Shown here in pieces: positions 5,701 through 64,000 of a stretch of 64,000 bases of DNA. Below the pieces are notes generated by a model, which searched no databases, was not told the origin of the DNA, and saw only the letters and a program-made list of their open reading frames with translations. A program made the translations under genes and the position numbers. Source of the DNA: Fimbriosthenelais zetlandica (lineage: Eukaryota); assembly GCA_977030845.1 (NCBI GenBank), contig OZ365109.1, positions 61,008,001-61,072,000 on the forward strand, written 5' to 3'. How positions within the stretch are numbered: position 1 is the first letter of the stretch; the number at the start of each line of letters is the position of its first letter.

Positions 5701-5935
5701 CAACATCCCCCCTTTCATGAGTGGAAAATCACAGCTCTCCCCAGAAGAAGAGGTAGCAACAAGGAGGATAGCCTCTGTCCGGATCCATGTTGAACGTGTT
5801 ATTGAGCGTGTTAAGAACTTTCGCATACTTAAATATATATTTCCAAATACCATGGCTGCTGATCTCAATAAGATTTGGGTTATATGTTGCTATCTGGTAA
5901 ACTTCACGACTGATCCGATTGCATCTGACAAATAA
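2775..5935 (+). CDS. THAP-domain DDE transposase (HARBI1/DDE_Tnp_4 family), 3 exons, 525 aa
   Basis: Exons 2775-3105, 4239-4812, 5263-5935; all GT-AG, phases 1 and 2 match, 1578 nt total. Exon 1 has a THAP C2CH finger (CCVPGC...FYKFP...W...VCSLHF...SVPT). Exon 2 has a coiled coil, FYTGF and an HTH ([29 protein letters not shown]). Exon 3 has the catalytic D/D/E ([25 protein letters not shown]). Confidence 0.92.
3650..3910. repeat. Degenerate ~50-bp tandem repeat in transposase intron 1
   Basis: About five copies of ttaggcct(c/a)ccacattattattattgtatctataaagtaatcttc, starting near 3656, 3724, 3773, 3819 and 3872. Confidence 0.75.
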
Positions 5936-14000: not shown

Positions 14001-17000
14001 ACAAATAGATCTATTTCATTTTAAAGCAAGCCTTGGTTCTGACCAATGCCTGGGTAATGAAGAATCAGAAGAGTTCTAACCAATGTTTTCAGGTAAAGAA
14101 AGGCATTGACACCTTTGACTATGGACCAAGTTTGAACGTTATAGTGACAGGAGGCTATGATGGCCTTGTTCGCATATGGAATCCTTATGTTCCGGCTAAG
14201 CCCGTTATACGACTGGATGGGCATCAGGTAAAAGACTACTGATAGTTTAATGAATATGCATGAATGCCTTACTGAAAAATAAAATGGAGCCTGAAAGCTA
14301 TAACATTGATGGTGCATTCTTTACTTGTTCTGTATGTATTTTACTTGTTTGTAAAGATACTTTATGCTGAGAACAAATTTGCTTTATCCTTTTGTCGTAG
14401 TTCCCAGTGCAGCATGTAAGGATTGACACAGTGTTGGAGAATGTGGTGAGCATCTCTGAGATTAAAGAGATCCGTGTCCATGATCTCTCGACTCAGGTCT
14501 GTATCCAGACCATCTATAAGAAAATGGTACTTGGACTAGGTAAGCAATATTGTCATTTCACAGAAAAGTATTGATTTCAGTGGTTCACCCTATGGAATTG
14601 TTATTGACATCTGTAGTGGAGTACATGTAAATAGTTTGAAGGTCCACATATCTTGAGGAATGCTTTCCCAGAATAGAAAAGGCCAGGGTTCAAATTCCCG
14701 TCTGGACCCAGGGATGTCTTTGCTTGCTCACACAGGTTCCCCACAATATGTTTCACAGTGAAGGTCAATAATTTTCTTTGGCAGGGCCTCGCAGTGTGAC
14801 CGCATTTTACCTGAATCAAGGGCGTCAGAATCTGGTGTTTGCAACGAACACGTTGGCTACTCTTGAGCAGAAAGAAGAGGAGAACATACCAGTGGAACTC
14901 AGTTCTCATGAGAAGGCCATCTCTCATGCACTGTTCAATCCACTCTTTGAGCAGGTTGTCAGTATTGGCGCAGACTCCTCGGTCTGTGTCTGGGCGATAA
15001 CTAATGGATCAAAGGTTAGTATTCAAAATTGTGTTTCTTCCATTATTTATATCCACCAGGTGCCCCAGGCAGAAACGATGACCTTTCTTATCACCGACAC
15101 TGGGCAGCCATTTTAGAGAATGTTACACCAACATGCTGAAAGCCCCATGTTTCAGGGAGAAATGGTCTTGCTGCCATTCAGTGTTTGAACGGTAATAAGA
15201 TTGTAACTGCCTGAAAATACATGTTTTTCTTGCTAACCTGCTCCACAGTACTGTACACAGGTCGCTTTATCTTTTCAAACTCCAAGGTTATGCAGTTCAA
15301 AGCACATCAAGTTCGACGCAATGGCGAGATGAAGGATGTGGAGGTGACAGCCATGACTTTTGATCCAACTTTCCGCCGTCTCATCACTGCAGCCAAAAAT
15401 GGAGACGTCCGAATCTGGAACTTCAATAATGGTGCATGCCTCAGAGTGTTACCAAAGTTTGACAACACAGAGATAACATCTCTGTCCTGTCCCAATCACA
15501 ACATCTTAACAGCTGGCTGGAACAGGTAGGTCAAAACCTGCATACATGTATGCCATTTCGTCACCTTGGTCATTTTCCATACTACATGTAATGTATATAT
15601 CATGTTGTTATGCAAAATATTACAACTCTTGTGACACCTTCTTCCATCTTTCAGACGAGTGACAAAATATGTTGACTCTGCGGATGATGACAGTGTTCGT
15701 TGGTTGAAGCTTTACCACCGTGATGATATCCTCTCCATATCTCATTACAATGGGAATGTTCTAGCATCTGGTTCCTATGATGGGAATATCCTTGTCTGGT
15801 CTCTAGCCACAGGCCGGCTTTTGTTCTGTTTGAACGGAAACATCAGCGACAAGCAAATTCGTGCAGCAACTTACTTCAAGTCCGAGATAATCAAAGATGA
15901 TACACCAGAAAATGGTGTTTCACCAAAGGATAGAAATGATATGAGCAACAACAGCCCAAGGATTGAAACACAGGACAAATGTGTAACAAATAATGCTGTT
16001 CAAAAATTATTATTTCTGGAATCCCGTGAGAGTGATGCAGAGACTGCAACTTTGTTGGCAGCATGTGCTGATGGACAAATCCAGGCATGGTCACTCCACC
16101 ATCTAAGTGGCCTTCTCGGTACCTTTCCAGCCGCACACTTAAAGGACACCAGCGTCAACTCTATGGTGACGGATGAAGAGAACATTTTGCTTATCACTGC
16201 AGACTCGGGTGGATATGTCAAGGTATTTGACATGAGTAATTATTGCACTTCTGGTTGGGAAGAGCAGGAACAAGACGAGACGTACATTGCTGAGAGGGAA
16301 GAATTGCATAAGACGTTTCCTTTCATAGTCTGGTCACAAATGGTCCTGGAACATTCGCATAGTGGAATGCAATCTTGGACCAGGCGATATATGACGGTGA
16401 GTAAAACGTACTTTATGACATAGAAGACTTTATGACAGAATGTACCAGATGTCTTTACTATGATAGAGCAGATGATTGCTATACTGCAATATCTTTTGCA
16501 GGAAGGTAACAATAGGCCACCAATGATGAACTCTTTCAGAGCTCATCTTCAAAGTATTACAAGCCTGGATCTCGTTACAGTGAGTAAATTCCACCATTTT
16601 GATTAGGCAATTTCAATTACCCTGCCAATATCTTTGGCCAAAAATCATAAATGACATATATACTTCATTTTAATCACGTCCTAGGTAAAAGGCTCTACAA
16701 TGCTCCTAACTGCCAGTCTGGATCAATCAGTTCGACTGTGGTCAATTCAAGGCCAGTTCATTGGTATATTTGGACAGCCTGACTTATGGGACTTGCGTAT
16801 GACCTTCCCAAGGTACCCCAAAGAGATGGCAGACATTCAAGCTACAGGGGTTTATAGACACAGGTAAATACTTTACGACAGTGTGCATGTAGATGAACAG
16901 GGGTAAAACAAGAGATTGCATGCCTGTAGAATGTTTTTTTAATCGTAGGAAGGTACTATTGCCCCCTGACATACGCCGAGTGGGTTCAGCAGCTACTCTG

Positions 17001-41700: not shown

Positions 41701-44700
41701 GTTAAAGTTTTCCTCCAAAGAACATCGGCACATTTACGTATTTTGCACGTGTTTCCAAGTCAGTTGATTCTTTACAATTTTTCCAAATTTTATCCATTAT
41801 CGCCTCTTCAAAAATGATAGATGCAGCTAAGCTGGGTTTTTGATATAGTACAAGACGGCCTTTTTGATGCAAGTGCAACTGAGAAAAGTCGCATTGCGTT
41901 ATTTTGCTTCATTTTGCAATATCTGACACATTAGTTTGTGATGTGGTCACATTAGAGGCACCTATAACATAACATCTTTCAAAGAAGAAATCCATAAGAG
42001 ACGATTGCTTAAAAAGAATAATTTATGTTCCCATGAAATTTGAAATTTTTGGCAACAAGATGGGATAGAGGATCTTCTCGGTGAGTATAGAAGTAAAACA
42101 TTCCAATCACCTAATATATTTTGTACTGTTTTTCACTATTTTTATATTAGTACCTACATTTGATTATTCCTGCAACTAAATTTGTATGGGACTAAATTAT
42201 ATACATCCCATTTAACCCTATTCTCCAGGACAGTATGGCACTATGTTCACTTAATACTTTGGCCCCAGAACCGAAATTAGCAGCATATTATTGGCTAGGC
42301 AACTGCTGGATAATATCAAAAGAGATATTATATATGGGTCATATAATGTATTATTGGTTGAGGCAGAAATGTAATTTGCACGAGCAGATTACTCTCTTTG
42401 CCAAATGTATTTAGTTATAACACTGTACTTCGTCTATCCATTTCCTTTCACCTTTTAAATTCGAGGGATAGTTACACTAAGTTACAGTTGGTCAAATCAG
42501 TGTAACGAAATGTGTAACGATTCTATTAGACTTCAATAATGCCATGTCAGTATAAGCTCTAATTCATGAAATCTTATTTATAGGCCGGTCCTTTTACTGT
42601 TTGCACCAATATTCTACTTTGCCAACATATTCTTAAAAGGCATCAAGAATGTTCAAAGTAAAGACCTGTAATAATAATAAAAAAATCACTGTCCTCCCAG
42701 AGGACGGGGGCAGAGCCAGAGGGGGATCAGGGGCCTAGGCTGTTCAAAGATGATTAAATTTTCTTTACTTCCTTTATTCAGAATCGGTTCAGCTGACAGT
42801 ATAAGAACCGATTTAACCGAGGACCAAACCGGACCCAGTTGAATCAGAACATTATAGGGATGACCATTTGTAATGAAGTTCCATATAGGTTAAAACAATA
42901 TGAGGCTTTGCCCTGTAATAAACCCGGATCCACCTCTGGGTGTCCAGCCTTTATCAGGTTGAAGCACTGCCCCCTTTAACCATTACCTTGCCCATTTCTT
43001 CTTTTTATTTTCCAGTGTCGACGAAGAGCGGACGGCTGCTGATCTTATGGCGGACACCAACGTTGAATTATCGCCTGATGGCACAGTCAGTTGGACAACT
43101 CCAGCCATGTTCAAAAGCGCTTGCAAAATCGATATTGACAACTATCCTTTCGATGTACAACGATGTCCACTCAAACTGGGCTCCTGGACATATAATGGCT
43201 TGGAAGTCAATGTGACGTCACATGCTCATGACATATTCCTTGACAATCTTATGGCTAATGGCGAGTGGGAAGTCAGTGAAGCACCATGCACACGCAACGA
43301 GGTGTATTATTCCTGCTGTAAGGAGCCCTACCCCGATGTGACGTGTGTCTTGAACATGAAACGACGTCCCCTCTTCTATATCTATAACCTGGTGGTTCCG
43401 TGTCTCCTTCTTATCTTTATTGGCTCACTCGTTTTTTGTCTGCCTCCAGAGAGTGGAGAGAAAGTCTCCTTGGCCATGACAGTCCTTTTAGCGATGACCG
43501 TCTTCATGCTTGTGGTGATGGAAAATATACCTCCTACTTCTGAAGTAGTTCCACTTTTAGGTGAATATTGTTCTACCTGTTTTCTTTTGTTATTTCTTAT
43601 GACTGGTGTCAAACATTTTGCGGTGCTTTCCCTATCAGAAGACCTTTTAGGCCTAGGTTTTTTAGGCCTAGGTTAATTAATAAGTTTTCTCCTTTAGCTT
43701 AAAATATAGTCCTCTGTTGTAGAAGAATTGAGACGTTTTGATAGCAAGTCAAAGGTCAGCTTTGTCTTGATATAGGCCTAAGTGACCGAATATGAAGCTC
43801 ATGCAGACAATCAATATTAGTCATACAATAGCCAATAATCTTCAGTTTAGTGGATATTTCCTAAATTAACCTCTATTATAGGTCAATGCTGTAATATCTT
43901 GTAAGGTAGTGTATACCAGTTATTGTTTTATGCTAGCCTAGTTGGCCTACTCCCTGTAAGAAGCCACCCTTTTACAGTCCATGCCATACAAAGCTACCCG
44001 GAAGTGTCGATAGGGAGGCCGGAAGTACAGATCCATAGGTCTTCGGACATGGATTAGGCCTATAGTAGTGCCGGACGAGGACACCCAGCACGCATACACG
44101 ATTTCAGATAGTTTTGGGAAGGAATTAGCATTATAGATTGGGTGCATGATTGGTGTGTAACGATCACATATATATATATATAGCTACATATTGAGCTAGG
44201 CTATAATTATATAGGCCTAATATAGTAGAGGGCTAAGCATTAGAGGTCGGTGAGAATGGGGGAGGGGGTGGGCGGGGGAGGGTGGTATAGTATGCGGCCT
44301 ACTGAACGCATCAATCAATTCAGGTACCTTCATTGTTGTTTAGGATGTAAGGACTACACTGAATAATTATTTTTATCCATTAAACTATGGGGGATACATT
44401 AGTTACCAATAATTATAATGAAATTAATTATTTATCTAGGATCTAATGGGTAACCTGATTTAGAACTAGGCCTATCCCTCGTTGGTAAACTCTTGACCCA
44501 CCTGGGACGTACAGCAGGCAGACCCTTGAAGTAAATCTCCATTTTAATACTGGAGCTTTGTATTAGGCCATGGAATATGCAAAACCATGCATGCAGTAAA
44601 CTTTGACCAGCCACACGGTTGGCAGAAATAGCCCTTATATATAGACTTTCTCCCTTCTGAGGACCATTGAGACTCTTGCGACTTTCCCATTGGCATTGTA

Positions 44701-45930
44701 GCGGCAGTAATATAACATTTCCTAATGAGAAGAGCTAGCCATTCATACATAAAATCCTATCGTAACAGTTTTTGAACAGGTTATTCTAATCAGACTCGTA
44801 AAACTTTGAAAATGCTCATTTCCTTGGCATTGTAACATATAATACAGACGTTAGAATCATCCTGCTATACAAGAGCTCTATATATAACGGCAGAAGATGC
44901 TGGCGAATAGAGCTGAGACTGCACAGTGCTAGTGTACATGTATACATATCCTGACCTGAAACTGAGCTGCATAGTATTTCCCAGAGCTTTCAATACATCA
45001 TCTTATTACAGAGCTTTAACATTAACAAGTCACCTTTTCATATTAACAGTGCTGTCAATTCTTTTTATTTAATTTTCACAATTTAATGCGAACTCTTTGT
45101 TCATGTTAGATCCATCTTTTTTCTATTGTAGAACAATTCATTGGAGCCACCATCGTCCTACTCACACTCTCTGCCATGACAGCCATATTTACAGTTAACT
45201 TCTTTTTCCGTGGCCACGGTTCAACACGACCTTCAGTCTGCGTTCGTAGAATCATGTTTAATGTGCTGGCCAGGATAGTGCGAGTCAAACTGAATCTGCC
45301 ATGTGTATCTGACACTGAGAAGGTTTGTCTGCTATCATTTGTACCATGATTTTTTAAAAAGAGAAACACGTACATTATTTGGTGCCGATATTTATGCAGT
45401 GTCCTAAGAGACATATATCATTTAAACCACTGCTATAAACTTTAATCTGATTGCCGCTATGTTTGTAAAAAAAAAAAAAATCTAAAAAATATTGGGATAA
45501 AATCAATTTTGATCTACCAATTTTCACTTTTTATTTCTATGTCTCCCTTCCATTCTAGAGACGCAACAGTCTGACAAGAGAGAATGGATGTGTTCGCCTA
45601 TTGCCATGTGCAGCACAAGGTCAGGTACATGACAGTAGCGAAATGGTCTCACCATGTGATACAGAGGAAAACAGTCAAATGCTGCTAAAACTGAGCCCTG
45701 AGGAGTCCAAGTTATCGCCTTCTGGTGTAACAACAGTCATGGAGACAATACTCAGTCGGCTGGAGAACATTAGTCACCTTCTACATGAGAAGGAAGGCGC
45801 CAAGATGCAGGAGGATTTGGTCAAATTAGAATGGAGATCAGTGGCATTGGTTCTGGATCGCATTTTCCTTATCTTTTTTCTTCTGCTCACCTGTATAACT
45901 ATCATTTCCATCTATTCCAAAATACCTTAG
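29770..45930 (+). CDS. Nicotinic acetylcholine receptor alpha subunit (alpha9/alpha10-like), 7 exons, 483 aa
   Basis: Exons 29770-29809 (signal peptide MALYWIRIVTLFQ|VFLVVSS; least certain), 39813-39961, 40600-40644, 40784-40893, 43016-43560, 45132-45322, 45559-45930; 1452 nt in frame. The family-typical 45-nt and 110-nt exons are present. Cys-loop CKIDIDNYPFDVQRC, loop B GSWTY, loop C vicinal cysteines YYSCCKEPY (alpha subunit), cation-type TM2 GEKVSLAMTVLLAMTVF, and TM3 and TM4. Confidence 0.93.
39006..39774. repeat. ~175-bp tandem satellite, about 4.3 copies, in nAChR intron 1
   Basis: Anchor tttcccaacattg(a/t)aggttcaattattcc recurs at 39052, 39231, 39402, 39577 and 39749 (periods 179, 171, 175, 172). 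ORFs 38948, 39198 and 39496 are translations of this repeat. Confidence 0.93.
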
Positions 45931-50226: not shown

Positions 50227-53200
50227 TCAGCTGTCGACGTTGCAGACGTTCACACCCAGGCTTTTGAGCCAAATGATGAGTTCTGTTCTGAACTGTCCCC
50301 AGTATGGCAGACAGGAGGCCACGTTGAAGCCAGGGTTGGCTGGGTCTCGTACAAGAGGCGTCGGAGGTTCAAAGTCCACTGGGTATCGCTCTGGTAGGTA
50401 GAAGGTGCTCCAGGATATGCTAAATAAAGAAATTATTCATTACGGTGAATACAATAGCATATAATAAAAATTGTGTGTAGATGGCTAAATATTTAGTTTG
50501 ACACACGGGTCCAATAAGGACCATTCATTAAGTGCTAATTATATAAGTATCACAATAGCTTTAGTTCCAAACGGTAGATGAGATAAATGGAATGTTAAAT
50601 TCAATTGTTGAAATATATGATAGACGCCTACTCACCTCAATTCAGGTGCAAGCACAAGTGCACCAAGCCTTTGTAGAACCCGTTTCATATCAACACTAGA
50701 ATAAGGACAAAAAATTTACATGATTAGCAAAATGATGAACTGAATTTTTTTTAATGGAAGCCTCTCCCTCTAAACTTTAAAATCTGAGTTAACCGGAGTT
50801 GGTGTAGGATAGTCTACAATGACTCAAGATATACTAACGATCGAGTGTCCTCAACAGACTTGATGACGAGGAGAGACAGGAGAAATCCATCTGGCCTGTA
50901 CAATGTCTTCTTCCATTGGACACAATTCCTCCAATGTTTCACCACTTTGATAATTTCCTTCACCTGTAAAAGCAATATCTCAGCTGAATTAGATTAAAAA
51001 AGTACTATATGACTGCAATTGCACTGCCATCCTAAATTCGCAAATATAAATTAATAAAAACAATAAATTAACAGAAAATAAATTAATAGAAACAATGGTA
51101 GGCCTACCTCGTTTGGTTGATCTGTGATGAACTTTTTCTGGAGGCGAGCTGAGCCTAAGGCACACCATTGCTTGCCTTTGAGGATATCCTGTTTGCATGT
51201 TAGATCATAGAGGGCATTGTAGCCACCTCTCCGTGCCTCATCCGTGTCCCAGTCATAGGAGAAGTGAATATCTACATCAACGCCGCCACAAGTGAACTAG
51301 AAAACCAAGAGAGTATAGCATTAGAAATATCGCATTATCTTGAAGATTTGGTTATAAAAATTCCAACAAATTGCAATGCACAATTGCTCAGGATTTTAAG
51401 TGGACCGTAGTGCTTTCTGTAGAAAAGAAAAGTACAAGGAAAATGTAACATACCTGTAATGCATGAACGGCTTTGGTGAAGTCTTGACATTTTGGGAGTG
51501 GGAAGAAGGGGTCAGGGTTTGTGACAGCGTTCTGGACAACTTTGCTTGTGGCATGTAATAATGCTGGCATCCATGCTGACTGGCCAGATATTGGTAAATC
51601 TGAATAAAATAGAAGTTATCATACATAATTCATATTTTGCATAGAAAAGACGTTTCCAATAAATAATCAATCCAAAGACGAATTAGACTTCTCATTCACA
51701 TACGATCAAAAAGGGGGAAAACTAAAACTGTGTATAATGTGTTGTTCATCTCTTTTGGGGACAGGAGTAATTGTTGGCAACAATTTTCTACAAATACATG
51801 ATTCACCACTTTGATGAAACTCCCAAGACACGCAATACTGCAATTTGCTCATCAGGCCTCTAGTTCCGTCACAGTCTACACGGGGGCAGCAATGTTAGCA
51901 TTGCATGTGGAGTGAGCTTGACTGTCTGGGCATCCAACTTTATTAATCTATGCTAATATAGACAATGTTCATTGACGCAATGATCACTCAAAGATAACAT
52001 AAAATGTCACATTGTATAATACAAATATTTAAATTCAATCGGCATAAATATTAGAACAATCGTAGGCTTACGGATTGCAGAGGGTCCAATGACATGAAAC
52101 CCATTCAGTATGACGCAAACATTCGATCGCTAAACTTTTATAGAGGAGTAACAAAGTTGAGAGGGAGATAACTACACTCTCCAGCATCCACAGTTATCCT
52201 AGGACATTCCCATACATATAAACTGCCCCAAGTCCAGTGACCTGCTACCAGGCCTCAGGCCATGGCGCTCCCGGGGCATGTCACACCATTCACCGTGCAT
52301 ATGATATATATAGACCTGTTTACTCTTTTGGCATAACTTGCCAAATCCATAATTGGACATGGCTTTTTCAGCTTTTTACTCAGCCATAAGAAAAGCTTTT
52401 GGCTGGGAAAATGCATAATTGTTCTATCTGGATTGTCTGCCAGGTTGAGGTTGAAGCAGATTCTGAAGGTCTGTTAACTTTTGAGAGGGTCAACGAACTT
52501 TTCCATTATATTTTGGACTCATTACTTATGGTTCATGTTCTAAAGTTATCAATCTTAATTTGAGTGGTAGCTGTTTTCAGATTAAAGTGTTGCTTACCAG
52601 GGCTGTATATAACAAGGTCTACATCCATCCTACTCCGAGTGGAGGTACCACTACCCTGAGAACCAAACTCCAGAACCTCAGAGACTCTCAAAGGTATACG
52701 TTGCTGGAAAATGATTATTAATTCCAAGTTTAATTGACGGTCTTGAATATCCATGTGACAGGTTGAGCAATGAGGTTATACAATCTGCATTAATCAATTA
52801 AGTAGCCTACGTAGCATTAAAGCATTTGAATGCACTAAGGCCTTGTAAAGAATTAATTTCAATGACCCAAATAGCCATATACAAGTACCGTAGGATATAT
52901 CCTTGCAAAAGCAACGCAGGTTACTATCAGCAATCATTCTAGAACATTGCATTGCTTCGATAGATTTCCTTTCTAAATTATTAACTCTCGAATGTAACAA
53001 TTGTTCTACAGCATATTTCAAAATAATCTTGATCGTGATTAAAACCTTATAGGGACATACTTGAAGGAATCTTATGAGGGTGGCCACGATCTCCTTCTGT
53101 TTGCCGACATCAACAGGACTTGGCCTGGCCTCCGTGAAGAGGGAAGTTTCATCAGAGACAGCTATACCGCTCTCCGTGGACACGTCTTCCCGTGTACCGT

Positions 53201-56200
53201 GGAATAAATCACGGCTAGTGATGTATACTTCATCACGGAAACTCTCCTCCTCTCTCGCCTTACAAGTTTCGGCTATGTTCTTAAGGACATCGCTGAAGAA
53301 TCCTTTACCAAAGTCATCATCCTCTGTGTTCATCATGTCCCCTGTTGACAATGCCTGGAATTCATAATATATTCTGAATAACAAATCTCAGTAACGATAA
53401 ATTAGGGGAATTGATGCATGTGGCAGGAGAAAACAGACCAATGTTTATTATATATGCAGCCTAACAAGGATAAAATATTGAACAAATATTGTATATAAAT
53501 TTGGGATTGACTGTAGTGAAATATTAAAAATTATAAATAAAGATAAATCAGCTCAACGATGGGATGAAGCTAAGTTAGGTCCTTAATTTTAATGAATTAA
53601 ATTTTAATCTAACGAAATGATCTAACACTAATGATATGTCATGTTAGTAACAACAGGTTGTCATGGACTGAAAAAGAGTCTCACTCATTTATTATGAACC
53701 CAATGCAACAATGGAAGAAGTAAGGAAACCAAAGAGATAGAACCAAGGCACATCACATATCATTTCAACATGCAGATATATTTATAGACCTTTTTGGAAA
53801 TTTGAGTATGTAATGAGCAAGTTCACCCAAAGATAATTTGGCATAACACCAAAGAACATCCTTAAATAGAATTCGGATATTTCCATTCAATGTTTCCTCA
53901 TTCTCAAAAGTGCAAAGTTCAGACAGTATTTTGATATCATAAAGATCATATCAAGAAATATTCTTAAGACGGAACCCTAGCCATTGAACTCATAGAGTGA
54001 TCCTCAAGACCCCAATGATGATGGAACTCATATATGCTTGCCAACTTGATTCCCGAAATAAAAACGCACACAAAAATCCTTATTTCTAGACTATTACCTT
54101 GAAAAGATGGGACCTGTCATCCACTGTTGAGTTACCCCACTAGCAACCATTTGAAAATCAATTAATAAAAGGTTCATCAAGACTACAATCTAATCGAAAG
54201 CATTAGATAAAAGCATAAGGGTGGAATCAAAGAACACTGCAATTCCTAACATATTCTGCAATCATTGATAGCAATTTGCGTAATTATTATAATGTGTCAG
54301 CTGACTACAACATGCATTAAAATCTGCCTAAAACTTCGTACATCTATATTAAAAATATTTGGAAACGTTATTAATTGATTTATAGCAGATGAAATTGGAT
54401 TAAGCAAAGATTAAATCTCACATCCAGACTGTCGTAGGATTTGTAGAGCTGCATACGGGGACTCATCTGAGAGCCAGAATCAGGCGTGCGAAGGTCATCT
54501 CTGGAGGTGTCAAGGAAGGAGAGAGACGCCCGGGAGGCGGCCATCTCACGCATATCCTCCAGGCTCCGGGTCTTCTCCTGGAGCAAGCGTCTGTAATAAT
54601 GAGTAATTAATTGTATTGTTTAACACTGTCTGGTCGTCATGGCACTCCTTGATGGCCAGACAATTGGGTTATGTACTGATGCATTACGTTCATTGAGGTG
54701 CTTCTGGTTTATTGCTGGTTTGCAAAAATCTGGCCCAAATTTTCATTTTAAAATTCAAATTGACCCTTTCTGCAACAGTTTAATGACATATACATGCGCA
54801 TCAGAAACCTATGGTCACATTTATACAATAATAATTATGACAAAATTGCAAGGAATTGTAGGACACAGTGGCTTACCTGGCCCTGATGAGATGCTTGTTC
54901 TGGTAGTCAAATCTGGGTATACTCCTCATACCTAGAGGTAGTGTTTGTAGGGATAACAGGTTCACCCGCAGTAGCACCACATTACTAGAGCCGTCTGTGT
55001 AAGGGTTACCCTTTTCTTCCAACTGAAATGGTAGGAAGAAATATTTGAAATTATTATACCATTCTCAGGTCAAAATTTCACTTTAAATTGGATATCATAT
55101 CCCATGATGAATATTAATTTCACAATGCGCGGTTCCCAGTGCATTATTCTAGCATGTTTCATAGTTGGTCTAAACAAAAGATATGCTCTCCCTGTTTTAA
55201 AAAAGAGGTGCTTTTGGACAGGTAACCAGACTCTGATATAATTGCTTTATAGATTCTCCTAAACAGACCTAAACAGACTCCTAAACAGCAGTCATTAACC
55301 AGAAAAACTTTGTTATGACCTAAAAACTGAATACATATTAAACAACATGGCAATCCTTTCCAATCACTAGAAATGGGTCGAACATCTTGACCTACCAAAA
55401 AAAAGGAAATGGGTTGGTCATACAGAGATAGGGTTGTTCGATGGAAATGAAGAGAAAGTATTGGGTTTGTGTGAGAGATGTAAAAGTTGATCCTAGTTTG
55501 ATAGCATTCGTGTCACATTCACTGGAGCCATCTGTGGCCAAAACAAGCACACATGTATCCATCTACCTGATCCAGACTTCCCCTCCTTCTCTTCCTCTCA
55601 CTGCTCTATTCAATGTGTCACTTTCAGAGAACACCCACTGCCAACTTTTCAACCTCTCAACAGATCACAGCCACTGGTAAGGTAAACACCAAAAATAAGG
55701 CCTAAAGGGTGTATTGAAGGGGGTACTTCACAATTTAACCATGCACCTCCTTCAAATCACAAGAGCAAATCAGAAGAGCTACTGGCCCCCTTAAGACAGT
55801 TCCTTTAAATTAAAACTCGCTACAGAAATGCAAATGACCTTGGGCCTGTTTCAGAACAACCATTAGCAATGATAAGTCTATGGGATAATTTTACGCTAAA
55901 ACAGGCCCCTGCTATTCAGGGTCATTTGGTCTCAAAATTGTTATAAACTTTCACCATGGCAAAAGCTTTGAACTCTCCTATCTTAAAGGGACAGAGGAAA
56001 TATTCGTCATGGCCTTACAATGTTCTAGGCAGATTGCAATCCCAGTCCAAGACCTCTTTCTTAGATTATGCTCTAACGCATTGATCTGGAAAAGGGCCAG
56101 GGATTTCAGTGTCCAACACGAAGATGAAAGTGCTCAACATATATGTAAACAAGTTTCCTTTACCAGTTCCAGATCAACATGTATTTCTTGTGCACCAACT

Positions 56201-58344
56201 GCACTTTAGATACATCTAACTTAGACACAGAACTAAGACTGAGTCCAATGATATTCATGCCAAGTCTTCTTTACCCACCTCAACTTTCATTCTAATTCTC
56301 AACACTTTTAGGTCCTGCCACTTGCCTAAACTTCGTACAAAATGTTATTTTACCAATCTAGATAACGAAAGGATTACAGAACTCGTTCATAATCCCGATG
56401 GTTAGTTTCATAGAGAAGTTACTTTATTTCCATTTTATTGGCAAGAACCTACTGTAGTATGGCTATTTCGCACTAAACTGTCCTACGTTGACGGTTCTAA
56501 TTCCACCTAGCTTTCAATGGCCTGCCACATGTTCCCAGTTTTGTATACACCACCTGTCATTTTCTGCAGGTATCTGGAAATATTCCCAATCTTTTGGCTG
56601 AGAAAAGAGATGTTTTTGGCACTGTACACGTCAATCAGCATAACTGCCCCACTTCCCCATGTTGTTGACCATTCAGAGGGGAAAAAGTCTAAGGGCATAG
56701 ACTGGGACTCGAACTTAAAGCTTATAATTCACAGCTGGTTCAGTTACCCGTCCAACCGACTGAAGCATTACAGTTCAAGCTATAATGTTTATTATATACG
56801 GTCCGTCTTCTTTGAAGCCAAAAGAAAATATCATATTGCACGAGGCGATTCTCATTTTTCTTCAAATGATGGTTAGTTAATACCTCTGTGATACGTGAGG
56901 TGAATTGGAATATGTTTAAAGTTTTCCAATGACCGCCATCTGTCAGAAAGCTGGAGTCTAAACCTGTCACACCCCCACTGCTTTCTTTGATGAATTCTTC
57001 AGCTATATTGATACAAAAACACCTTATAAACCCGATTTGTCCTGGGGATGTTGCAACACCTGATATTTATAGCTGAAATTAATGGAAACTACTTGCTTAA
57101 GGATCAATGACAAGTATAAAAATTCTAAGTATAAAAAAAGAAAAGTTGATTACTGAAGTGATGCTACACTAACAGACTTGAGTTCACAATTCTGATGAAC
57201 ATTGTGATAAAAAGCTATATGACAATTTTCTTTCAGCATGAAAAATATGTATTTAATTGAGCATACAATCTTCATCAGCGTCAATATGTAACCAGTCTTG
57301 CTTGGAAAGTCTTACAGATGTTTATCAATTAAACATATGACTGTGTCTAGGGGTCTGCAGACCCAGGAGCCAACTCATATAGAAAGAGAGTAGACCTTGT
57401 CATAGAGGCTAGACAAATAGCTGGAGTAAATAAGAGGATGGCTACTCCAATAAAAGCCAAAGGACAACCTCACAAGAGGGTCATAAAGATCAAAGTGATT
57501 TAGGTCCACTTCGCTCAGATTTCCTGAATAGCAGCTAAATCCAAATTGACATAAGCTTAAATTCGATTATGCAAGTTTCCAATTACCGAATTAAAAATAG
57601 AAAATTTAATAGATAGTGGATAGTTAAAGGTGAAAGAGGGGGAGGCAGGTAAAATGTAGTTGTTACTATAATGGAGGATTGTAAGAATTATCCTTTTTTG
57701 TAAGAAATTTTCTTTCCTAATTTAGGAAAACACTTGAATTCAAGTTCCCTTTTGATTTCCCAATGTAGATGTTATTCTCAAATTTATTTTGACATCTATG
57801 AGAGTGGGAGTGCAATTATTTTCTGCCTTCAATAATGCATCTAGACATGGCTCAGGTCAGACAGTTCATATTTGTAATGTATGCGTGAATATTATGTATA
57901 CTTGCCATGCACACATGGGAACATACCCTATCAATATTGACATTTAAGCTTTCCTTACCATCTGTACTGACAGAAACATAGAGATTCATGTTCGCTAGAT
58001 AAAACCCTTAGCCCTACCCCATTTCTTGATCTATACATGGGATAAAAATTATTTACTCAGAGCCAAATGCTATAGGGTAAGTCGCACAAACCAACCTAGA
58101 TAGTAGAAAGTCTTGTATTACCCAAAGCAACTTGGAATTCGTGGATTGCCTTTATTTTTCTATTTTTCAATCGTTATAGTTTACATACATATCAAGAGTA
58201 ATCTTTGTACTGGTTAAAGTGACTTTAATCCATTTCAGGTAAGTATGAACATGGAAGGACATCATATTTGAAGCAGCAACACGTGGGCTGCACCACATAC
58301 TGGGACATTTGGCTCAGTTCCACCTTCTCACCTGGAGCCATCAT
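50227..58344 (-). CDS. OAS: 2'-5'-oligoadenylate synthetase-like nucleotidyltransferase with N-terminal extension, about 449 aa
   Basis: Exons 58344-58332 (tentative start exon), 54931-54877, 54590-54422, 53354-53061, 52703-52598, 51599-51454, 51296-51108, 50963-50839, 50695-50636, 50419-50227; 1350 nt, phases consistent. NTase signature FGSQGSGTSTRSRMDVDLVIY, third Asp in GGVDVDIHFSYD, then LQKKF, IIKVVKHW and LVRDPANPGFNVA, collinear with OAS1. The core (50227-54931) is well supported; the first exon is an inference. Confidence 0.85.
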
Positions 58345-59649
58345 ACCTGTGGGGACAATCTACTAATGGCATTAGTCTTGCACCTGTCCTTAACTCCATA
58401 CTCTATCCAAAAACCCCCATTCTTTCCCTCGAAATAATGTTATCTTATCTTCATATAGACCTTCACATGCATAATTATTAAAAGTCCCAAACTATGTTAA
58501 ATATGAAAATACTTTTTAAATGATAACATCAAATAATGGCATTTGTATTCCACAATTGAGGCAGCAATCTTATTAATTTAATTTCTGATCTGCCCAATTC
58601 TAAAGCCATAAAGCTAAAACAAAATAGCCGTCACCATGTTGTTGTTTTGCTTGGAACAAGGCCTTGACATCAATCCAAATGATCAATGAAAATCTCATCA
58701 ACTGGGTAGTGTCTGCATGTCAACCTATAGTACAGTCGGTGTCAATGTCCTCATCACTTTTTAACTCATCATGATCAGTCTATTTTGAAGCCAGATCAGT
58801 GCACAATATAAGCTCGTATTGCACTTTTGCCAAAGCTCAAAATCTGATATCAATAACAATTGATTCCTCGTGAAATGACTTTTCATAAAGCCGACATATG
58901 ATAATAAATGGACTAAAATCTGTGTATTTCTGAGTCATTGACTCAATGTACCCTGTCCCCAAGTATAGGCTAGATGTCACCATTGAACTGTTGTGCCACA
59001 GTTGGACATTTTCAACCCCGTGACCATGTGGTTGGTCATGTGACCATTTTTACCTAGATTTACTTGAAAGGGGCACCACACATGCATGTAAAAAAGAATT
59101 AGTGGAAGCCTGAAAGGCAAAGAAAAGTTTAGTCAAAGCGTTTAAATAATGATATTTTCTGCAGATTCTGCCGGAATAAAAATGAATTATGCCTTACTGC
59201 ATACACGCTCTGTCTATCTTGGCCTATTTCATAAAAGTGATAATGTTACAGATTAATTCTGCATCCCTAAAAAGATACATGATCATTTTTCGTGTCCTAT
59301 GAACCAGAAGATCAACTCAAACAATTACTTGCTCCGTTGATTTTCAGTAACAAAATATGTACACTGATATTCGTGATGCAAATATATTTTTTCTAAGCAT
59401 AAAGGAAAAAGCAGGGTTGGAGAGCAACATAAAATGCAATGATTATACATATCAAGAACCCATTTATTTTGCTGCGTTTATTCTATTCATATGAGGTATG
59501 CATCTGACATGTCCTTTCCTTCCCGCTCATGGGTAAAATGAACCCATTTCAATCTGCAGGTGCGTTTGAAGTGCAGCAATATGTATTCACAAAGTGGCTT
59601 ACATTTGTTTGCCTTCTGACAGCTCTGCTAGGTTTGCATCTCTCGGACA

Positions 59650-59661
59650 TTCTCGCGAGAA
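59650..59661. promoter_or_regulatory. TCTCGCGAGA palindromic promoter motif, candidate OAS promoter
   Basis: TTCTCGCGAGAA in a local CpG patch, about 50 bp upstream (minus strand) of a GTAAGC donor at 59602-59597. Confidence 0.45.
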
Positions 59662-62600
59662 TAGAGTAGTAACGAGATCAGACCGTAAATGGACGTGATG
59701 GAATGAAGTGCAACATGTCAACACTTTAAACTCCCTCCATGTCTGGCTGCCAGCCAATTTTCAAATAATACAGCCCACATTATTGTATTTTGCCTCTTAA
59801 CCGGCTCCTATGTGTATCTGGTTTGAATTGAGATGCGCTTTTTCACTTAAAAAAGTATCAAATGCGATTTTACAGTGTAACACTGCATTTCATTCACATA
59901 GCTGGCCATACAAGTTTCATAATTCATAGATCATCCATGATGAATATCAATAGGCTTAAATTTACAAATTCAGGCTTTTAAAAATCCAATGATGACATTG
60001 AGAGTTAACTATATGTACATGTATGTCGAATATGATTGGGGAGTTGGGAGGGAATTAATAGGCTACATGTAGGTTCTGAAAGTTTTAATATAAGAAATAT
60101 TAAAATACAGTAGTTAATAACATTCTTTTAGAATTCCACCAATATAACCATGAGTATAAAAGGCCTATTAAGTCGTGCAGTCAGAACCCATGTATGAACC
60201 TAGATCAGTGAAAGCTATTTCAATCAATTCAATTGTATTGGTGAATTGAAGTAAAGAGAGAGAACGTGAGGATGATAAGGTAGGAGTGATAACCCTACAC
60301 ATGATCAGTACACTGATGTGGCTCCCTCATAAAAGACAGCCACCATGTAATCAACATGATCTCCATGACAACACTATTTGACTTGTGTGTTTACTCCTGA
60401 TATACAGAGAGAAACACGAGGCAAATACATGGAACCTGTCAGTTGAATAATTTATTAGTTTAACACCAGGAGATCTGCGTGATAATAATTGTTAAAAAAA
60501 AGTTCAAAATAGACCAACGTTTAGGTAGTCTTGAAGAAGATTTGGGTGATATTGTGTCATCCAAAGTTTTCCTATTAAATTCAAGCACCTGTTGTATATT
60601 TTAAACTACACATGTATGTTATAAATCACTTATAATAGTCATAGGAGGAAATTATAATTCACTATGAAATATTAAAGAGCAGTCCCCAAAATTGCCAATT
60701 AAATCTTTGGTAGTGAAAATCAAAAGAAAGTGGTTTAAAGTGAGATTTCTCGTTTTTTAACCGATGCAATTGTTATGGAATGTTGTTTGTTTTGAACCAC
60801 TTAATTTTCTCTTCTTTTTCTGTCTGGCACCTTCTTTTCAATGTCACAATATTTCAACTTTGATGCATTACATAAAGAGTTATAAAAACAAATGCCCAGA
60901 GGCATGAAATGAATCACAGCAGCATATCTGCTAACAGTCAGTATCACATCTTCCAACAGACAATATATATTACATGAACATGTATATTAGAGCCACTAGT
61001 AGTTTACTAATGAAATCTTTTCGTAAATGAAAATTTAATATTAGTAACCAAAAGATCATCATTCACAGAAATGTACGATATTTCCCATAATTTATCATAA
61101 TAGAGCACATAAACTGTGAGCAATGACCAACCACTAAGGCGCTTTGAAATATTAAGCAAATAATTTTGTGAATTTTCATATAATTTCAATTCTACCCGTG
61201 AAAGGTTATTTGCACTATTGATCGCACTTCATTGCCTTATATCACTATTACATGTATAGATGTTTAACTTGTTAGCTAAGCCACCAATGAACCAGTGAAA
61301 TAATTGGACATGAGGTATCACAGATTGTTCATGGCTGACAGGTTGGATCCATATACTCTATTACAAGCATTTCGAAAACAGAACACAGAAAGCATTGTGG
61401 TGCCACTCTTGATAGTATCTCAAGGTGGAAAGCCACAAAAATGTGTTCTGCTGTGATTCATGCTTTTACCTTTAGAACCATGCGACCTTAACAGGTCAAA
61501 ATTTGGTTACAGATAATCTGTATGACCCACTCCACCACACAAGCACCAATTCCCAACCCACCCACATATGATATACCTAGTCCGACTCTCCCTATTTTCT
61601 GAATGTCTATTATCAGTATAATTGATAATCAGTTGATACTAATTTCAGAGATTATGCAATGACATAATTTTGGTATAACTCCCGTTCTTAATTATGCCAG
61701 ATACCAATTGCCTTGTAGGGTCCTTATTAAGCTTGGACTCAAACTTGGATTCATGACAATTTTCTGATCTATGCAGTGAAACTTGTGAATTTCAGTTACC
61801 ATATAACTAGGCCTATATTCTACCATTCTTAGTAGAAGTGTGACTGGAAACAGTTAAGAAATGGAAATAAGTGTTATGTTTAGTCATCAGATGAAGGTGA
61901 ACATCATACAGACATTTCAAGCGCCTTAACCATGTAAGGAGTCAGTAAGTGATATTCATGTTCCAGGTATGTCAGGTAGAAATGTGTCAGTGTCATTCCC
62001 AGTATTATATCTTTAGCCTTAGATTAAACAGACCCATATATAATGATAAACACATCAACAAACCAAATATACCTTTAAATCTGTAAACAGATCTATGCAC
62101 AATGTCACTTTAACCGTGGCATATATCACAATGCTTAAGAATCAAGCAGAATATAGTCATTATAAAATGCATCATTTGAAACTACATAATAATCAAGCTC
62201 AGAAGCCTAGGCTATGAATCACTGACTTCAAACGTACATACGTGATTGTATCATAGATTTAATTAGTTTTTTTCTTCACAGATCATAAAGCATTTCCGGA
62301 CATAGTCATATATATTTGCCCACAACGGAATGCATCAGGCTTAAATTCCAAGCCCTGTTGATGCAATTTAATGGTAACATAATTAAATCCATATAAAGTC
62401 TAACTGACAGGATGTAGTAATCTTATGAACCTACCACTACCTGACCTAGTCGGGATTAATTGAGCCCCCCTGATGAAGACGGAGGTTTGTAATTAAGTTA
62501 ATTAAAGACATTATCTAGTGGTTTGAAACATTCCTCGTGTCAGCCTTGGAGACACTGATCCCTGGGACTCGCCTTGTGCTGTATCTAATGGACAACAATT

Positions 62601-64000
62601 ATACATGTAGGTGGGGGATATTTCCCTATACGTGTACTAGTATAGTAGCTAGACCTAGCCCTGAAATTATGGCTCAGTCAGTGGGTGTTTCTGATTGTTT
62701 GTTTCTGGGCGTAATAATGATCTAAGCTAAGCCCTGTATCAATAACATGAATACATTCATGTGTTTCCTTGCTATATTAAATTGATAAATTTACGAATGT
62801 TTGTATTCATTGAATGTTCCATGGCCAGAGGCTGAAGGGTTCATGTTATTTGCATTAGTAAATTTATATTCTGGTCCGGTCATGGCAGAACTAAACAATA
62901 TGCGGTAGTTATACTACTGTATAGTATTTTTTTGCGTTAGACATTTGTTATATTCTTCTGAATAATAACAATTATGTTGAGTGTAGTTCTGTTCTGACAA
63001 GTCCTACTTAGTTAGATCGCCATCAAATTCGATATGAAAGGTATGAGATCATTAGGAGACTCAGGTCTCTGGCTTCAATCCCAAGGCTCCTATAATGTGA
63101 TCTTTGACCTGGAAGTTCAGGACCATGTTCAACCTTCCTTCTCTTGAAGTTTCTCTAATTGAACTTTTCCACTCTTTCATCTTTTCCTCCCATAGCACCT
63201 TACAATGGGATTTTTGGTTGTCCTCAGAATGTTATATTTTGTAACCATGTGCATGTATTGTTCCTTAGACCCGTTAATGCTGTTCTAAATTAGGGGGTTA
63301 TTTGGGGGTAACTCCTGGTAGATATACCTGTATCAGGTGTTTAAAGGTAAGAATTATGGTCTGACCGATACACCCAGTACAAGATTAAACCATTGAGAAG
63401 GGGTGATTTACTCGCTGGGTGAGATCAGCTGAGATTTATGGCACCCAGATCAGAAGTAATGGGCGGTAAAACATGACACTTGGCATGCTTGTCCTTGACA
63501 TGCTTGACTAACAAACCATTCCTACACTATGTAAGTGTTTCTTCCCAATTTTCACTTTTCTAGGTTAAATCTTGTTCTTGGCAAAATAATCTGTTGAAAC
63601 CAACATTCCAATTCTCGGAAATTTAGTTTATAATAATGCACCTCGAATCATGTTTTGCTACAAATACAAATTTTGATCCTGTTCAGTTCAGGTCGTGGTG
63701 GGGGTGAAACAAGGGCAAAGCCTTCAAATTATATCAACTACATGTAGCCTATGTACATACATGCAATTAGTCAAAGCCTGGAGAAAGGCATAGTTTTATA
63801 ACTAACTATACGAGTACAAAAGTTCTAGTGAACTAGTGTTTTTGCCCATAAGAAATTTGGCCATAATTCATTTTTGCCTAAATTTAGTCAGTCCATGGCC
63901 TAGAAATATGAAGTCATATTATATTATATTATATTATATTATTGGACTTGATGAACAGGGACATGCGAGATGAATTAGGTTGGGGAGGTAGTATTTATGT

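What the first reader, a model, noticed from the sequence alone, without database searches (positions are those of the whole stretch)
50227..54931. Invertebrate OAS-like enzyme with a ~155-aa regulatory-looking N-terminal extension
The OAS fold with all three catalytic aspartates is preceded by a basic helix (PRFDYQNKHLIRARRLLQEK) and a long Ser/Asp/Glu-rich segment absent from vertebrate OAS1. The known 2-5A effector RNase L is confined to jawed vertebrates (established), so the product, activator and receptor of this enzyme are open questions. It is a candidate for an undescribed nucleotide second-messenger pathway (inference). It is the strongest novelty candidate in the window.
Basis: partly seen in the sequence, partly recalled or inferred. 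Interest (0 to 1): 0.75.

Follow-up and report, generated by a model that had tools for sequence, protein, structure and literature searches.

The report
MATH-domain–OAS fusion enzyme gene

Summary
The OAS-like core is real. Nine GT-AG exons on the minus strand (window 55022-50227) encode a G-S motif, DxD, a third Asp and an OAS1_C-type C-lobe. The best sequence and fold matches are OAS1, OASL, OAS2 and OAS3.

The proposed start Met (54929) is internal. The exon continues in frame to an acceptor at 55022. It joins, across an 18.9-kb intron, a 411-codon first exon outside the window (G000:C1:61081882-61083114). That exon encodes MATH domains; module 1 matches the USP7 TRAF-like domain at Z 14.3.

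The full model has 10 exons and 886 aa, with the order MATH modules, linker, OAS. It is collinear with:
- an mRNA-like contig of a relative (P0039, 870 aa, 62% identical);
- Helobdella robusta HELRODRAFT_181338 (979 aa).

Intron losses in two relatives confirm the junctions. The "extension" is a predicted-disordered acidic linker (about 158 aa) under strong purifying selection. It holds a 35-residue motif almost invariant in 15 sequences from polychaete-like assemblies.

The gene is single-copy in this genome. Function is inferred: an active OAS-type nucleotidyltransferase regulated or recruited through its MATH domains and linker, probably not by the OAS1 dsRNA surface. No RNA data were available for this species. 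I found no paper describing this architecture. The scan noted this stretch only as the same finding.

The parts
55023..64000 (-). Part of intron 1 (18.9 kb in all). Coding exon 1 (411 codons, MATH modules, start ATG) lies outside the window at G000:C1:61081882-61083114, equivalent to window 73882-75114.
   Evidence: P0039 residues 1-399 match one open frame at 64% identity, E 6.6e-173. ATG with an in-frame stop 14 codons upstream; donor GAG|gtgagt in phase 0; no ORF of 120 aa or more and no recognisable gene in the intron.
54877..55022 (-). Coding exon 2 (aa 412-460): the end of the third N-terminal beta-rich module, plus the start of the helix PRFDYQNKHLIRAR.
   Evidence: Acceptor tttcag at 55023-55028, donor gtaagc. 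Conserved in P0039 (60%), L003 (86%) and Helobdella.
54422..54590 (-). Coding exon 3 (aa 460-516): linker part a. It holds motif A, LEDMREMAASRASLSF (window 54515-54562), which is also conserved in leech and Paralvinella.
   Evidence: 98% aa identity to L003 although synonymous sites are saturated. Paralvinella protein P0014 spans the exon 3|4 junction.
53061..53354 (-). Coding exon 4 (aa 517-614): a variable acidic stretch; then motif B, RDxFHGTREDVSTESG..SDExSL..EARPSPVD (window 53109-53213), almost invariant; then the first helix of the OAS N-lobe (KQKEIVATLIRFLQ).
   Evidence: 14 protein clusters from other assemblies at 59-93% identity; alignment; pN 0.07 against pS 0.89; motif B region has pLDDT below 50, the helix pLDDT 95.
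52598..52703 (-). Coding exon 5 (aa 615-650): NTase G-S motif (FGSQGSGT) and the catalytic pair MDVDL, equivalent to OAS1 S63, D75 and D77.
   Evidence: NTP_transf_2 E 1.7e-4; residue-by-residue alignment of the orthologue to human OAS1 4ig8. The 614|615 junction is confirmed by P0039.
51454..51599 (-). Coding exon 6 (aa 650-698): N-lobe insert (DLPISGQSAWMPALLHA...).
   Evidence: It is fused with exon 7 in L004 (intron absent there), which confirms the junction.
51108..51296 (-). Coding exon 7 (aa 699-761): third catalytic Asp (GGVDVDIHF, equivalent to OAS1 D148) and the start of the C-lobe.
50839..50963 (-). Coding exon 8 (aa 762-803): VKEIIKVVKHW (equivalent to OAS1 K213) and the RPDGFLLSLL helix. 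The donor is corrected to CGATC|gttagt.
   Evidence: weak OAS1_C match. P0039 reads ...EETKS|YEMKP. L003 has exons 8 and 9 fused (VEDTRSVDMKRV is continuous).
50636..50695 (-). Coding exon 9 (aa 803-823).
50227..50419 (-). Coding exon 10 (aa 823-886 plus the TGA stop): OAS1_C end with PLVRDPANPGFNV, equivalent to OAS1 PVILDPADPTGNL.
   Evidence: weak OAS1_C match; 24 hits, including Helobdella and amphioxus OAS1-like proteins; single copy in the genome.

Best explanation
Shown. The interval holds exons 2-10 of a 10-exon, ~25-kb, single-copy gene. It encodes an 886-aa cytosolic-looking protein built as follows:
- N-terminal MATH modules: module 1 clearly resembles the USP7 and SPOP MATH domains, module 2 is recognised weakly, and a third beta-rich module is unproven.
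- A short helix.
- An acidic linker of about 158 aa, predicted disordered, with two strongly conserved short motifs.
- A complete OAS-type nucleotidyltransferase with the G-S loop, DxD, the third Asp and the equivalent of K213.
The protein is the orthologue of a family kept in annelids (Helobdella, Paralvinella and many unnamed assemblies) and has cousins in amphioxus and a sea anemone.

Inferred. The C-terminal domain is a working template-independent nucleotidyltransferase that makes 2'-5'-linked oligonucleotides (2-5A-like) from NTPs. Its activity or location is set not by the OAS1-type dsRNA groove but by its own front half. The MATH modules dock on a short peptide of a partner (a receptor tail, an adaptor or a pathogen protein). 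The conserved Ser/Thr/Asp/Glu motifs in the linker act as a phosphorylation- or partner-dependent switch. The receptor of the product is unknown.

I put the architecture at 0.9 or higher, 'catalytically active NTase' at about 0.6, and the MATH/linker-regulated signalling mechanism at about 0.35.
For: Gene model:
- All ten exons have GT-AG borders and compatible phases.
- The model is collinear with P0039, the 870-aa ORF of a 3438-nt mRNA-like contig with UTRs. That contig maps in blocks onto a related genome.
- Intron losses in L003 and L004 confirm two junctions. Paralvinella P0014 spans another.
- Exon 1 was found 18.9 kb upstream.

Domains:
- Pfam MATH_2 has E 6e-15 on the genome's own exon 1. 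NTP_transf_2 and OAS1_C score above cut-off on the orthologues.
- By sequence, human OAS1 is the best PDB match, E 9e-11, with S63, D75, D77, D148 and K213 aligned to identical residues.
- The AF2 core has pLDDT 85-95, and the top Foldseek hits are OAS1, OASL, OAS2, OAS3 and then CdnC.
- MATH1 against the USP7 TRAF-like domain gives Z 14.3, rmsd 2.2 A over 129 aa.

Constraint:
- In the linker exons pN is 0.03-0.07 against pS 0.8-0.9.
- Motif B is almost invariant in 15 sequences.
- MATH, linker and core are equally conserved: 63/55/63% to P0039 and 40/28/38% to leech.
- The gene is single-copy.
Against: - No RNA run could be listed for this species, so the exon 1-exon 2 splice across 18.9 kb rests on orthology and phase only.
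- No activity data exist for any member.
- Basic residues that I recall contacting dsRNA in OAS1 are mostly replaced (K60 to E, K66 to S, K199 to T/A; only R195 stays basic, as K; alignment). The donor/acceptor residues Q229/Y230 are G/F here, so substrate and activator may differ or activity may be altered.
- Amphioxus cousins have lost catalytic residues (P0034 lacks the DxD), so non-catalytic roles occur in the wider clade.
- Single copy and strong purifying selection are atypical for antiviral sensors.
- Motif B is absent from the leech orthologue, which has a poly-Asn tract instead.
Confidence: 0.5

Rival explanations
1. One reading: a stand-alone protein of about 445 aa that starts at the ATG at 54929, that is, an OAS core with a 155-aa N-terminal regulatory extension, made from a promoter inside what I call intron 1. 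It could exist alone or as a second isoform.
For: An ATG is there, and the Met is conserved in the polychaete-like relatives. No RNA data for this species exclude an internal start. Intron 1 is long enough to hold a promoter.
Against: The frame is open and conserved upstream of the Met, back to a strong acceptor. Those codons complete a beta-rich module that begins in exon 1. The only transcript-like sequence of the family carries MATH plus OAS in one ORF. In Helobdella the Met is a Val.
Confidence: 0.07
2. A pseudo-enzyme or scaffold, like OASL or NF45/NF90. The OAS fold only binds a nucleic acid or nucleotide, and the protein signals through its MATH modules and linker motifs without making any product.
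For: Amphioxus cousins have lost the DxD or the third Asp. The dsRNA-contact and Q229/Y230 equivalents differ. OASL and the NF45/NF90 DZF domains are among the fold matches. The strongest conservation lies in a non-catalytic linker motif.
Against: All annelid-type sequences examined (window, L003, P0039/L004, Helobdella) keep the G-S motif, DxD, the third Asp and the K213 equivalent across deep divergence with saturated synonymous sites.
Confidence: 0.2
3. A housekeeping or developmental enzyme, not an immune one. Examples would be a MATH-targeted nucleotidyltransferase acting on a specific RNA or protein substrate, or a signalling enzyme in a conserved cellular pathway.
For: The gene is single-copy with one-to-one orthologues and uniform, strong purifying selection over all domains. 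That is unlike the birth-and-death evolution described for vertebrate OAS genes (PMC10400998). MATH domains of USP7 and SPOP serve general ubiquitin pathways.
Against: The nearest characterised relatives of the core are all innate-immune OAS proteins. One ISRE-like element and an excess of IRF half-sites lie upstream of exon 1, which is weak evidence.
Confidence: 0.2

Closest known systems
Vertebrate OAS1 (human 4ig8, porcine 4rwp/1px5)
   Same: Two-lobed NTase plus OAS1_C fold. The G-S loop, D75/D77/D148 and K213 equivalents are identical. It is the best sequence match (E 9e-11) and the best fold match (E 8e-11).
   Different: Identity is only about 20%. The worm protein has about 600 extra residues in front (MATH modules and linker). 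Most basic dsRNA-contact residues and Q229/Y230 are not kept. No ANK-kinase-KEN RNase L was located in my own scan.
Helobdella robusta HELRODRAFT_181338 (UniRef name 'MATH domain-containing protein', 979 aa) and the unnamed transcript protein P0039
   Same: Same order of parts (MATH modules, helix, motif A, linker, OAS core). Identity over the full length is 37% and 62%. These are orthologues.
   Different: The leech replaces motif B with a poly-Asn tract. Neither protein is described in any paper I could search.
Amphioxus 'OAS1-like' long proteins (P0032 with three adenylate-kinase domains; P0034/P0055 with a charged coiled-coil front) and a sea-anemone entry (A0A6P8HGE7)
   Same: These are the closest non-annelid OAS cores (31-34% identity). 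They share the helices just before the core, and they also carry long N-terminal additions.
   Different: Their N-terminal parts are unrelated to MATH. Some have lost catalytic residues.
USP7 TRAF-like domain, SPOP MATH domain and the TRAF-C domains of TRAF1-6
   Same: The beta-sandwich of module 1 superposes at Z 14.3 (USP7), 13 (SPOP) and 12 (TRAF2). All of these bind short linear peptides.
   Different: There is no RING, zinc finger, BTB or protease domain, and no coiled coil in front. Here the MATH modules are joined to a nucleotidyltransferase.
Sponge and mollusc OAS (short, about 300-aa invertebrate OAS; the 'OASb' group of PMC10400998)
   Same: Invertebrate members of the OAS family. 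Some are reported active without dsRNA (a reference title cited in PMC6307210).
   Different: Those are single-domain proteins.

Membership tests
OAS family (NTase + OAS1_C) | Pol-beta-type NTase N-lobe with a G-S loop and three catalytic acidic residues (OAS1 S63, D75, D77, D148) | tested here: met
   The window encodes FGSQGSGT, MDVDL and VDVDI. The orthologue aligns residue for residue to 4ig8. Pfam NTP_transf_2 has E 1.7e-4 on the window exon and 9e-9 on the orthologue core.
OAS family (NTase + OAS1_C) | OAS1_C helical C-lobe (PF10421) above the Pfam gathering score | tested here: met
   Orthologues score 34.5-46.4 bits against a cut-off of 19.9. The window's single exons alone score only 13-14 bits because the domain is split over four exons.
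OAS family (NTase + OAS1_C) | Overall fold closest to solved OAS structures rather than to cGAS/Mab-21, poly(A) polymerases or CCA enzymes | tested here: met
   Foldseek ranks 1-7 and 10-11 are OAS1, OASL, OAS2 and OAS3 (E 8e-11 to 4e-8). CdnC and NF45/NF90 come lower, and no cGAS appears in the top 50. AFDB and Atlas searches agree.
OAS family (NTase + OAS1_C) | 2'-5' oligoadenylate synthesis | not testable with these tools
   This needs an enzyme assay.
OAS family (NTase + OAS1_C) | Activation by dsRNA through the basic groove (OAS1 K42/K60/K66/R195/K199; residue list recalled from memory) | tested here: inconclusive
   In the alignment K60 becomes E, K66 becomes S, R195 becomes K and K199 becomes A (T in the window). 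Most contacts are not kept, but an alignment alone cannot exclude another RNA surface.
OAS-RNase L pathway | An ANK-pseudokinase-KEN receptor nuclease in the same genome | tested here: inconclusive
PF06479 rings at one locus (C13), which has kinase and KEN domains and no ankyrin ORF within about 5 kb upstream; it is probably IRE1-like.
MATH/TRAF-domain proteins | Eight-stranded MATH beta-sandwich | tested here: met
   Module 1: Pfam MATH_2 E 6e-15 (56 bits, cut-off 32) on L005 exon 1; VIA Z 14.3, 2.2 A, 129 aa against USP7. Module 2: MATH_2 E 3.6e-4 alone, below cut-off. Module 3: no sequence support and a low-confidence model.
TRAF proteins proper | RING and TRAF zinc fingers plus a coiled coil N-terminal to a single C-terminal MATH domain | tested here: not met
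   Pfam finds no RING or zf-TRAF. The MATH modules are N-terminal and repeated.
cGAS-like receptors (Mab-21) | Mab-21 domain (PF03281) | tested here: not met
   There is no Mab-21 hit on the orthologues. The genome has at least 19 separate Mab-21 loci elsewhere.

The most novel reading that the evidence does not exclude
MATH-OAS is a peptide-licensed rather than dsRNA-licensed messenger synthase. Binding of a partner or pathogen peptide by the TRAF/USP7-like modules, and/or phosphorylation of the invariant linker motif, releases the OAS domain to make a 2'-5' oligonucleotide. That product is read by a receptor other than RNase L, for example one of the genome's STING-like or nuclease-dead ANK-kinase-KEN proteins. 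This would be an RNase L-independent OAS signalling pathway that arose in annelids.
Probability: 0.15. Interest if true: 0.85.

Novelty: new variant of a known kind. Interest (0 to 1): 0.55.

Why it matters
OAS enzymes are old, but outside jawed vertebrates nobody knows what switches them on or who reads their product. This gene hard-wires an OAS catalytic domain to peptide-recognition modules of the kind used by TRAFs, USP7 and SPOP, and to an unusually conserved, disordered Ser/Thr-acidic motif. That gives concrete handles for finding the upstream trigger and the regulation of an invertebrate OAS: MATH pull-downs, linker phospho-mutants and Asp mutants. Because the gene is single-copy with one-to-one orthologues, it is tractable in annelid models such as Platynereis or Capitella if they carry it. 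The case also shows how an internal Met and a 19-kb first intron can make a fusion protein look like a short enzyme with a tail.

Tried and rejected
- RNA evidence: two look-ups for sequencing runs (the 5-kb stretch and exon 4 alone) listed none, so read laying was never used.
- An alternative exon between exons 4 and 5 (the in-frame read-through VCPYKV...EQLLHSRV...): rejected. The only acceptor gives a stop, and all relatives join FLQ|QR directly.
- My first donors for exon 8 (GA|gtcatt, AA|gtctgt): rejected in favour of TC|gttagt.
- PF10421 scan of the genome: no hit even at this gene, so that scan cannot show absence of other OAS genes.
- Global MAFFT of fragments with full-length proteins scattered the fragments (A1 and A2). 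I used trimmed, region-wise alignments instead (A3-A5).
- Complex prediction, MATH region against linker: no verdict (score 0.00; controls not run; the partner is disordered). This is neither for nor against self-binding.
- hhalign among the three N-terminal modules: probabilities below 3% even for the two that Pfam calls MATH. This is uninformative for module 3.
- Promoter motif count: one ISRE-like site and 6 IRF half-sites against 1.8 expected from mononucleotide shuffles. Too weak to use.
- Literature: no paper with the locus tag or run ids, and none joining MATH and OAS.


Full report
**1. What is in the interval**

The window is eukaryotic DNA, about 38% G+C with short exons. On the minus strand between 55022 and 50227 I find nine coding exons. 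All have AG acceptors and GT donors and compatible phases:
- 55022-54877
- 54590-54422
- 53354-53061
- 52703-52598
- 51599-51454
- 51296-51108
- 50963-50839
- 50695-50636
- 50419-50227 (TGA stop)

The exons encode the following OAS features:
- the NTase G-S loop (FGSQGSGT);
- the catalytic pair in MDVDL;
- the third Asp in VDVDIHF;
- the VVKHW lysine;
- the PLVRDPANPGFNV motif of the OAS C-lobe.

Single exons match Pfam only weakly, because the domains are split across exons: NTP_transf_2 at E 1.7e-4 and OAS1_C at E 0.05-0.07.

**2. The "start" is internal and the gene is longer**

The frame upstream of the ATG at 54929 stays open to a strong acceptor at 55022.

A HMMER search of 1.84 billion representatives with the last exon returned mostly exon-sized ORFs. 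It also returned three long proteins whose C-termini match. One is Helobdella robusta HELRODRAFT_181338 (979 aa). Its Pfam domains are MATH_2 and OAS1_C, and UniRef names it "MATH domain-containing protein".

Searching with that protein found P0039, an 870-aa ORF with MATH_2, NTP_transf_2 and OAS1_C. P0039 comes from a 3438-nt contig of run SRR19075495 with 161 nt before and 664 nt after the ORF, which is the shape of an mRNA. That contig maps as nine collinear blocks onto a related genomic locus, L004.

tblastn of P0039 against the window reproduces every junction of my model. It also corrects one donor: exon 8 ends CGATC|gttagt.

P0039 residues 399-447 match window 55025-54876, so the Met is residue 443 of the real protein. 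Residues 1-399 match nothing in the window. They match one uninterrupted frame at G000:C1:61081882-61083114 (minus strand, 64% identity, E 6.6e-173), 18.9 kb upstream of exon 2 and outside the window. That exon has these properties:
- It starts with ATG and has an in-frame stop 14 codons upstream.
- It ends GAG|gtgagt in phase 0, which fits the phase-0 acceptor at 55022.

The resulting model has 10 coding exons, 2661 nt and 886 aa (about 101 kDa). The intron between exons 1 and 2 holds no ORF of 120 aa or more and no recognisable gene.

**3. Independent support for the splicing**

No RNA run could be listed for this DNA, so the support is comparative:
- In a close relative (L003) exons 8 and 9 are fused. 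In L004 exons 6 and 7 are fused, and a different intron is present. These intron losses and gains confirm those junctions.
- The NCBI partial protein of Paralvinella palmiformis (P0014) spans the exon 3|4 junction.
- The thirteen ORF fragments for exon 4 from unnamed assemblies (P0001-P0013) all run on with a Val right after ...FLQ/LLK. That is the GT of the same donor read through.

**4. What the parts are**

*Front half.* Pfam MATH_2 hits this genome's own exon 1 at E 6e-15, with two matched stretches. An AF2 model of P0039 1-447 (pLDDT 65) is all-beta.
- Residues 17-154 superpose on the USP7 TRAF-like domain at Z 14.3 (2.2 A, 129 residues). SPOP MATH domains give Z about 13 and TRAF2 gives Z about 12.
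- Module 2 (about 165-285) gets MATH_2 at E 3.6e-4 on its own, below the cut-off.
- Module 3 (about 310-440, completed by window exon 2) is beta-rich but has no sequence support.
I therefore call the region "MATH modules; two supported, the third unproven".

*Back half.* phmmer against PDB sequences ranks human OAS1 first (4ig8, E 9e-11). Then come porcine OAS1, OAS2, OASL and bacterial CdnC. In that alignment S63, D75, D77, D148 and K213 match identical residues. The AF2 model of P0039 448-870 has a core at pLDDT 85-95. Its Foldseek hits begin with porcine OAS1 bound to dsRNA (E 8e-11), followed by OASL, OAS2 and OAS3. AFDB clusters and the ESM Atlas agree. No Mab-21 domain is found.

**5. 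The "extension" is a conserved linker**

Residues 443-600 are acidic and Ser/Thr-rich: pI 4.8, with S 12.7%, D 11.4% and E 8.2%. They match no Pfam family.

In the AF2 model the region reads as follows:
- Then come two disordered stretches (pLDDT below 50) around a second helix (...FFSDVLK...).
- The confident first helix of the OAS N-lobe then begins at KQKEIVATLIRFLQ.

The region is nevertheless under strong constraint.
- A search with exon 4 alone found 14 protein clusters at 59-93% identity.
- Against L003, synonymous sites are saturated (pS 0.8-0.9) while pN is 0.03 (exon 3) and 0.07 (exon 4). That is lower than in the catalytic exon 5, where pN is 0.11.
- Motif B (RDxF[HN]GTREDVSTESG...SDExSL..EARPSPVD, window 53109-53213) is almost invariant in the 15 polychaete-like sequences. 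The leech has a poly-Asn tract in its place.
- Motif A (LEDMREMAASRASLSF, window 54515-54562) is kept in the leech too.

High conservation together with predicted disorder is the signature of short linear motifs. The motifs contain acidophilic-kinase-type Ser/Thr sites, an ESGxxxS stretch reminiscent of DSGxxS phosphodegrons, and A/E-x-x-S strings of the kind USP7's TRAF-like domain binds. These resemblances come from memory and are degenerate; they are leads only. A complex prediction of MATH region against linker gave no verdict.

**6. Distribution and copy number**

Named relatives are annelids (Helobdella, Paralvinella) and the orthonectid Intoshia linei, the latter as a C-terminal fragment. 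Most other notes of this scan also call the genome annelid; a few say mollusc.

The nearest non-annelid cores are amphioxus "OAS1-like" proteins and a sea-anemone entry. Their long N-terminal parts are unrelated to MATH: three adenylate kinases in one, a charged coiled coil in another. One amphioxus protein lacks the DxD.

Searches with full-length P0029 and P0039 found no annotated orthologue from another phylum. That method needs shared 5-mers, so this is weak evidence of absence.

In this genome the gene is single-copy by exon-wise search. Identity to P0039 is even across MATH, linker and core (63/55/63%), and likewise to the leech (40/28/38%). The fusion is therefore old and has evolved as one unit.

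**7. Possible partners in the genome**

Exon-wise Pfam scans of the genome gave:
- at least 2 STING ligand-binding-domain loci;
- at least 19 Mab-21 loci;
- one Ribonuc_2-5A (KEN) locus, on C13.

The KEN locus has a kinase exon just upstream and no ankyrin ORF within about 5 kb, so it is probably IRE1-like. I did not check this. If true, they are candidate 2-5A binders.

PMC10400998 places the working OAS-RNase L pair at the base of jawed vertebrates. It groups non-vertebrate OAS as a patchy "OASb" set and does not mention MATH fusions.

**8. How it most likely works**

Shown: the architecture, the intact catalytic signature, and the constraint on all parts.

Inferred:
- The core makes 2'-5'-linked oligonucleotides, as its family does.
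- Most basic residues that contact dsRNA in OAS1 (list from memory) are replaced: K60 to E, K66 to S, K199 to T/A. The enzyme is permanently tied to peptide-binding modules and a motif-rich linker. I therefore think activation or placement comes from protein partners and/or phosphorylation rather than from the OAS1-type dsRNA groove.

Rivals:
- a non-catalytic scaffold, as some amphioxus cousins seem to be;
- a non-immune role, which the single-copy, slow-evolving pattern favours;

**9. Novelty and verdict**

The OAS family and MATH domains are both well known, and an orthologue sits unnamed in public databases. I found no paper describing an OAS joined to MATH domains or the linker motifs. 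I rate this a new variant of a known kind with moderate interest (0.55). The scan had noted this stretch only as this same finding.

Noticed in passing
window 2595-5935 (+) and 8022-8741 (-): ORFs for THAP (E 6e-12), HTH_Tnp_4 and DDE_Tnp_4 (E 3e-48), which together look like a Harbinger/PIF-like transposase. A convergent YqaJ-like exonuclease ORF (E 9e-12) lies nearby. The scan already noted this as s1-217075.
   Followed up: partly
window 43047-45930 (+): Exons of a Cys-loop (nicotinic-type) receptor subunit: Neur_chan_LBD E 1e-29 and Neur_chan_memb E 3e-21. It is the next gene downstream of the OAS gene, in convergent orientation.
   Followed up: partly
window 14778-16423 (+): Several exons of a WD40-repeat protein (WD40 E 1.5e-9). 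The gene was not modelled.
   Followed up: no
L003:15147-16357: In a close relative, the last 45 coding nt plus the start of the 3' UTR of the orthologue are repeated 3.6 times in tandem (334-bp unit, 92% match). The window has no such array.
   Followed up: partly
G000:C19:4611155-4611583 (L006): A second, distant MATH-like open frame in the genome (32% identity to MATH module 1, E 5.5e-6). It was not examined further.
   Followed up: no
G000:C10:31923129-31924009 and C22:3366564-3368707: Two loci with STING ligand-binding-domain exons. At least 19 Mab-21 (cGLR-like) loci are spread over the genome, many as single long open frames.
   Followed up: no
P0017 and P0024: A 1877-aa Nippostrongylus protein and a bacterial SdrD-like protein hit the last exon through 10-21 short repeated stretches. 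These look like low-complexity or repeat matches, not homologues.
   Followed up: no
L005:2734-4233 (upstream of exon 1): One ISRE-like TTTCNNTTTC lies at -994, and there are six IRF half-sites against 1.8 expected from shuffles. This is weak, and the transcription start is unknown.
   Followed up: partly
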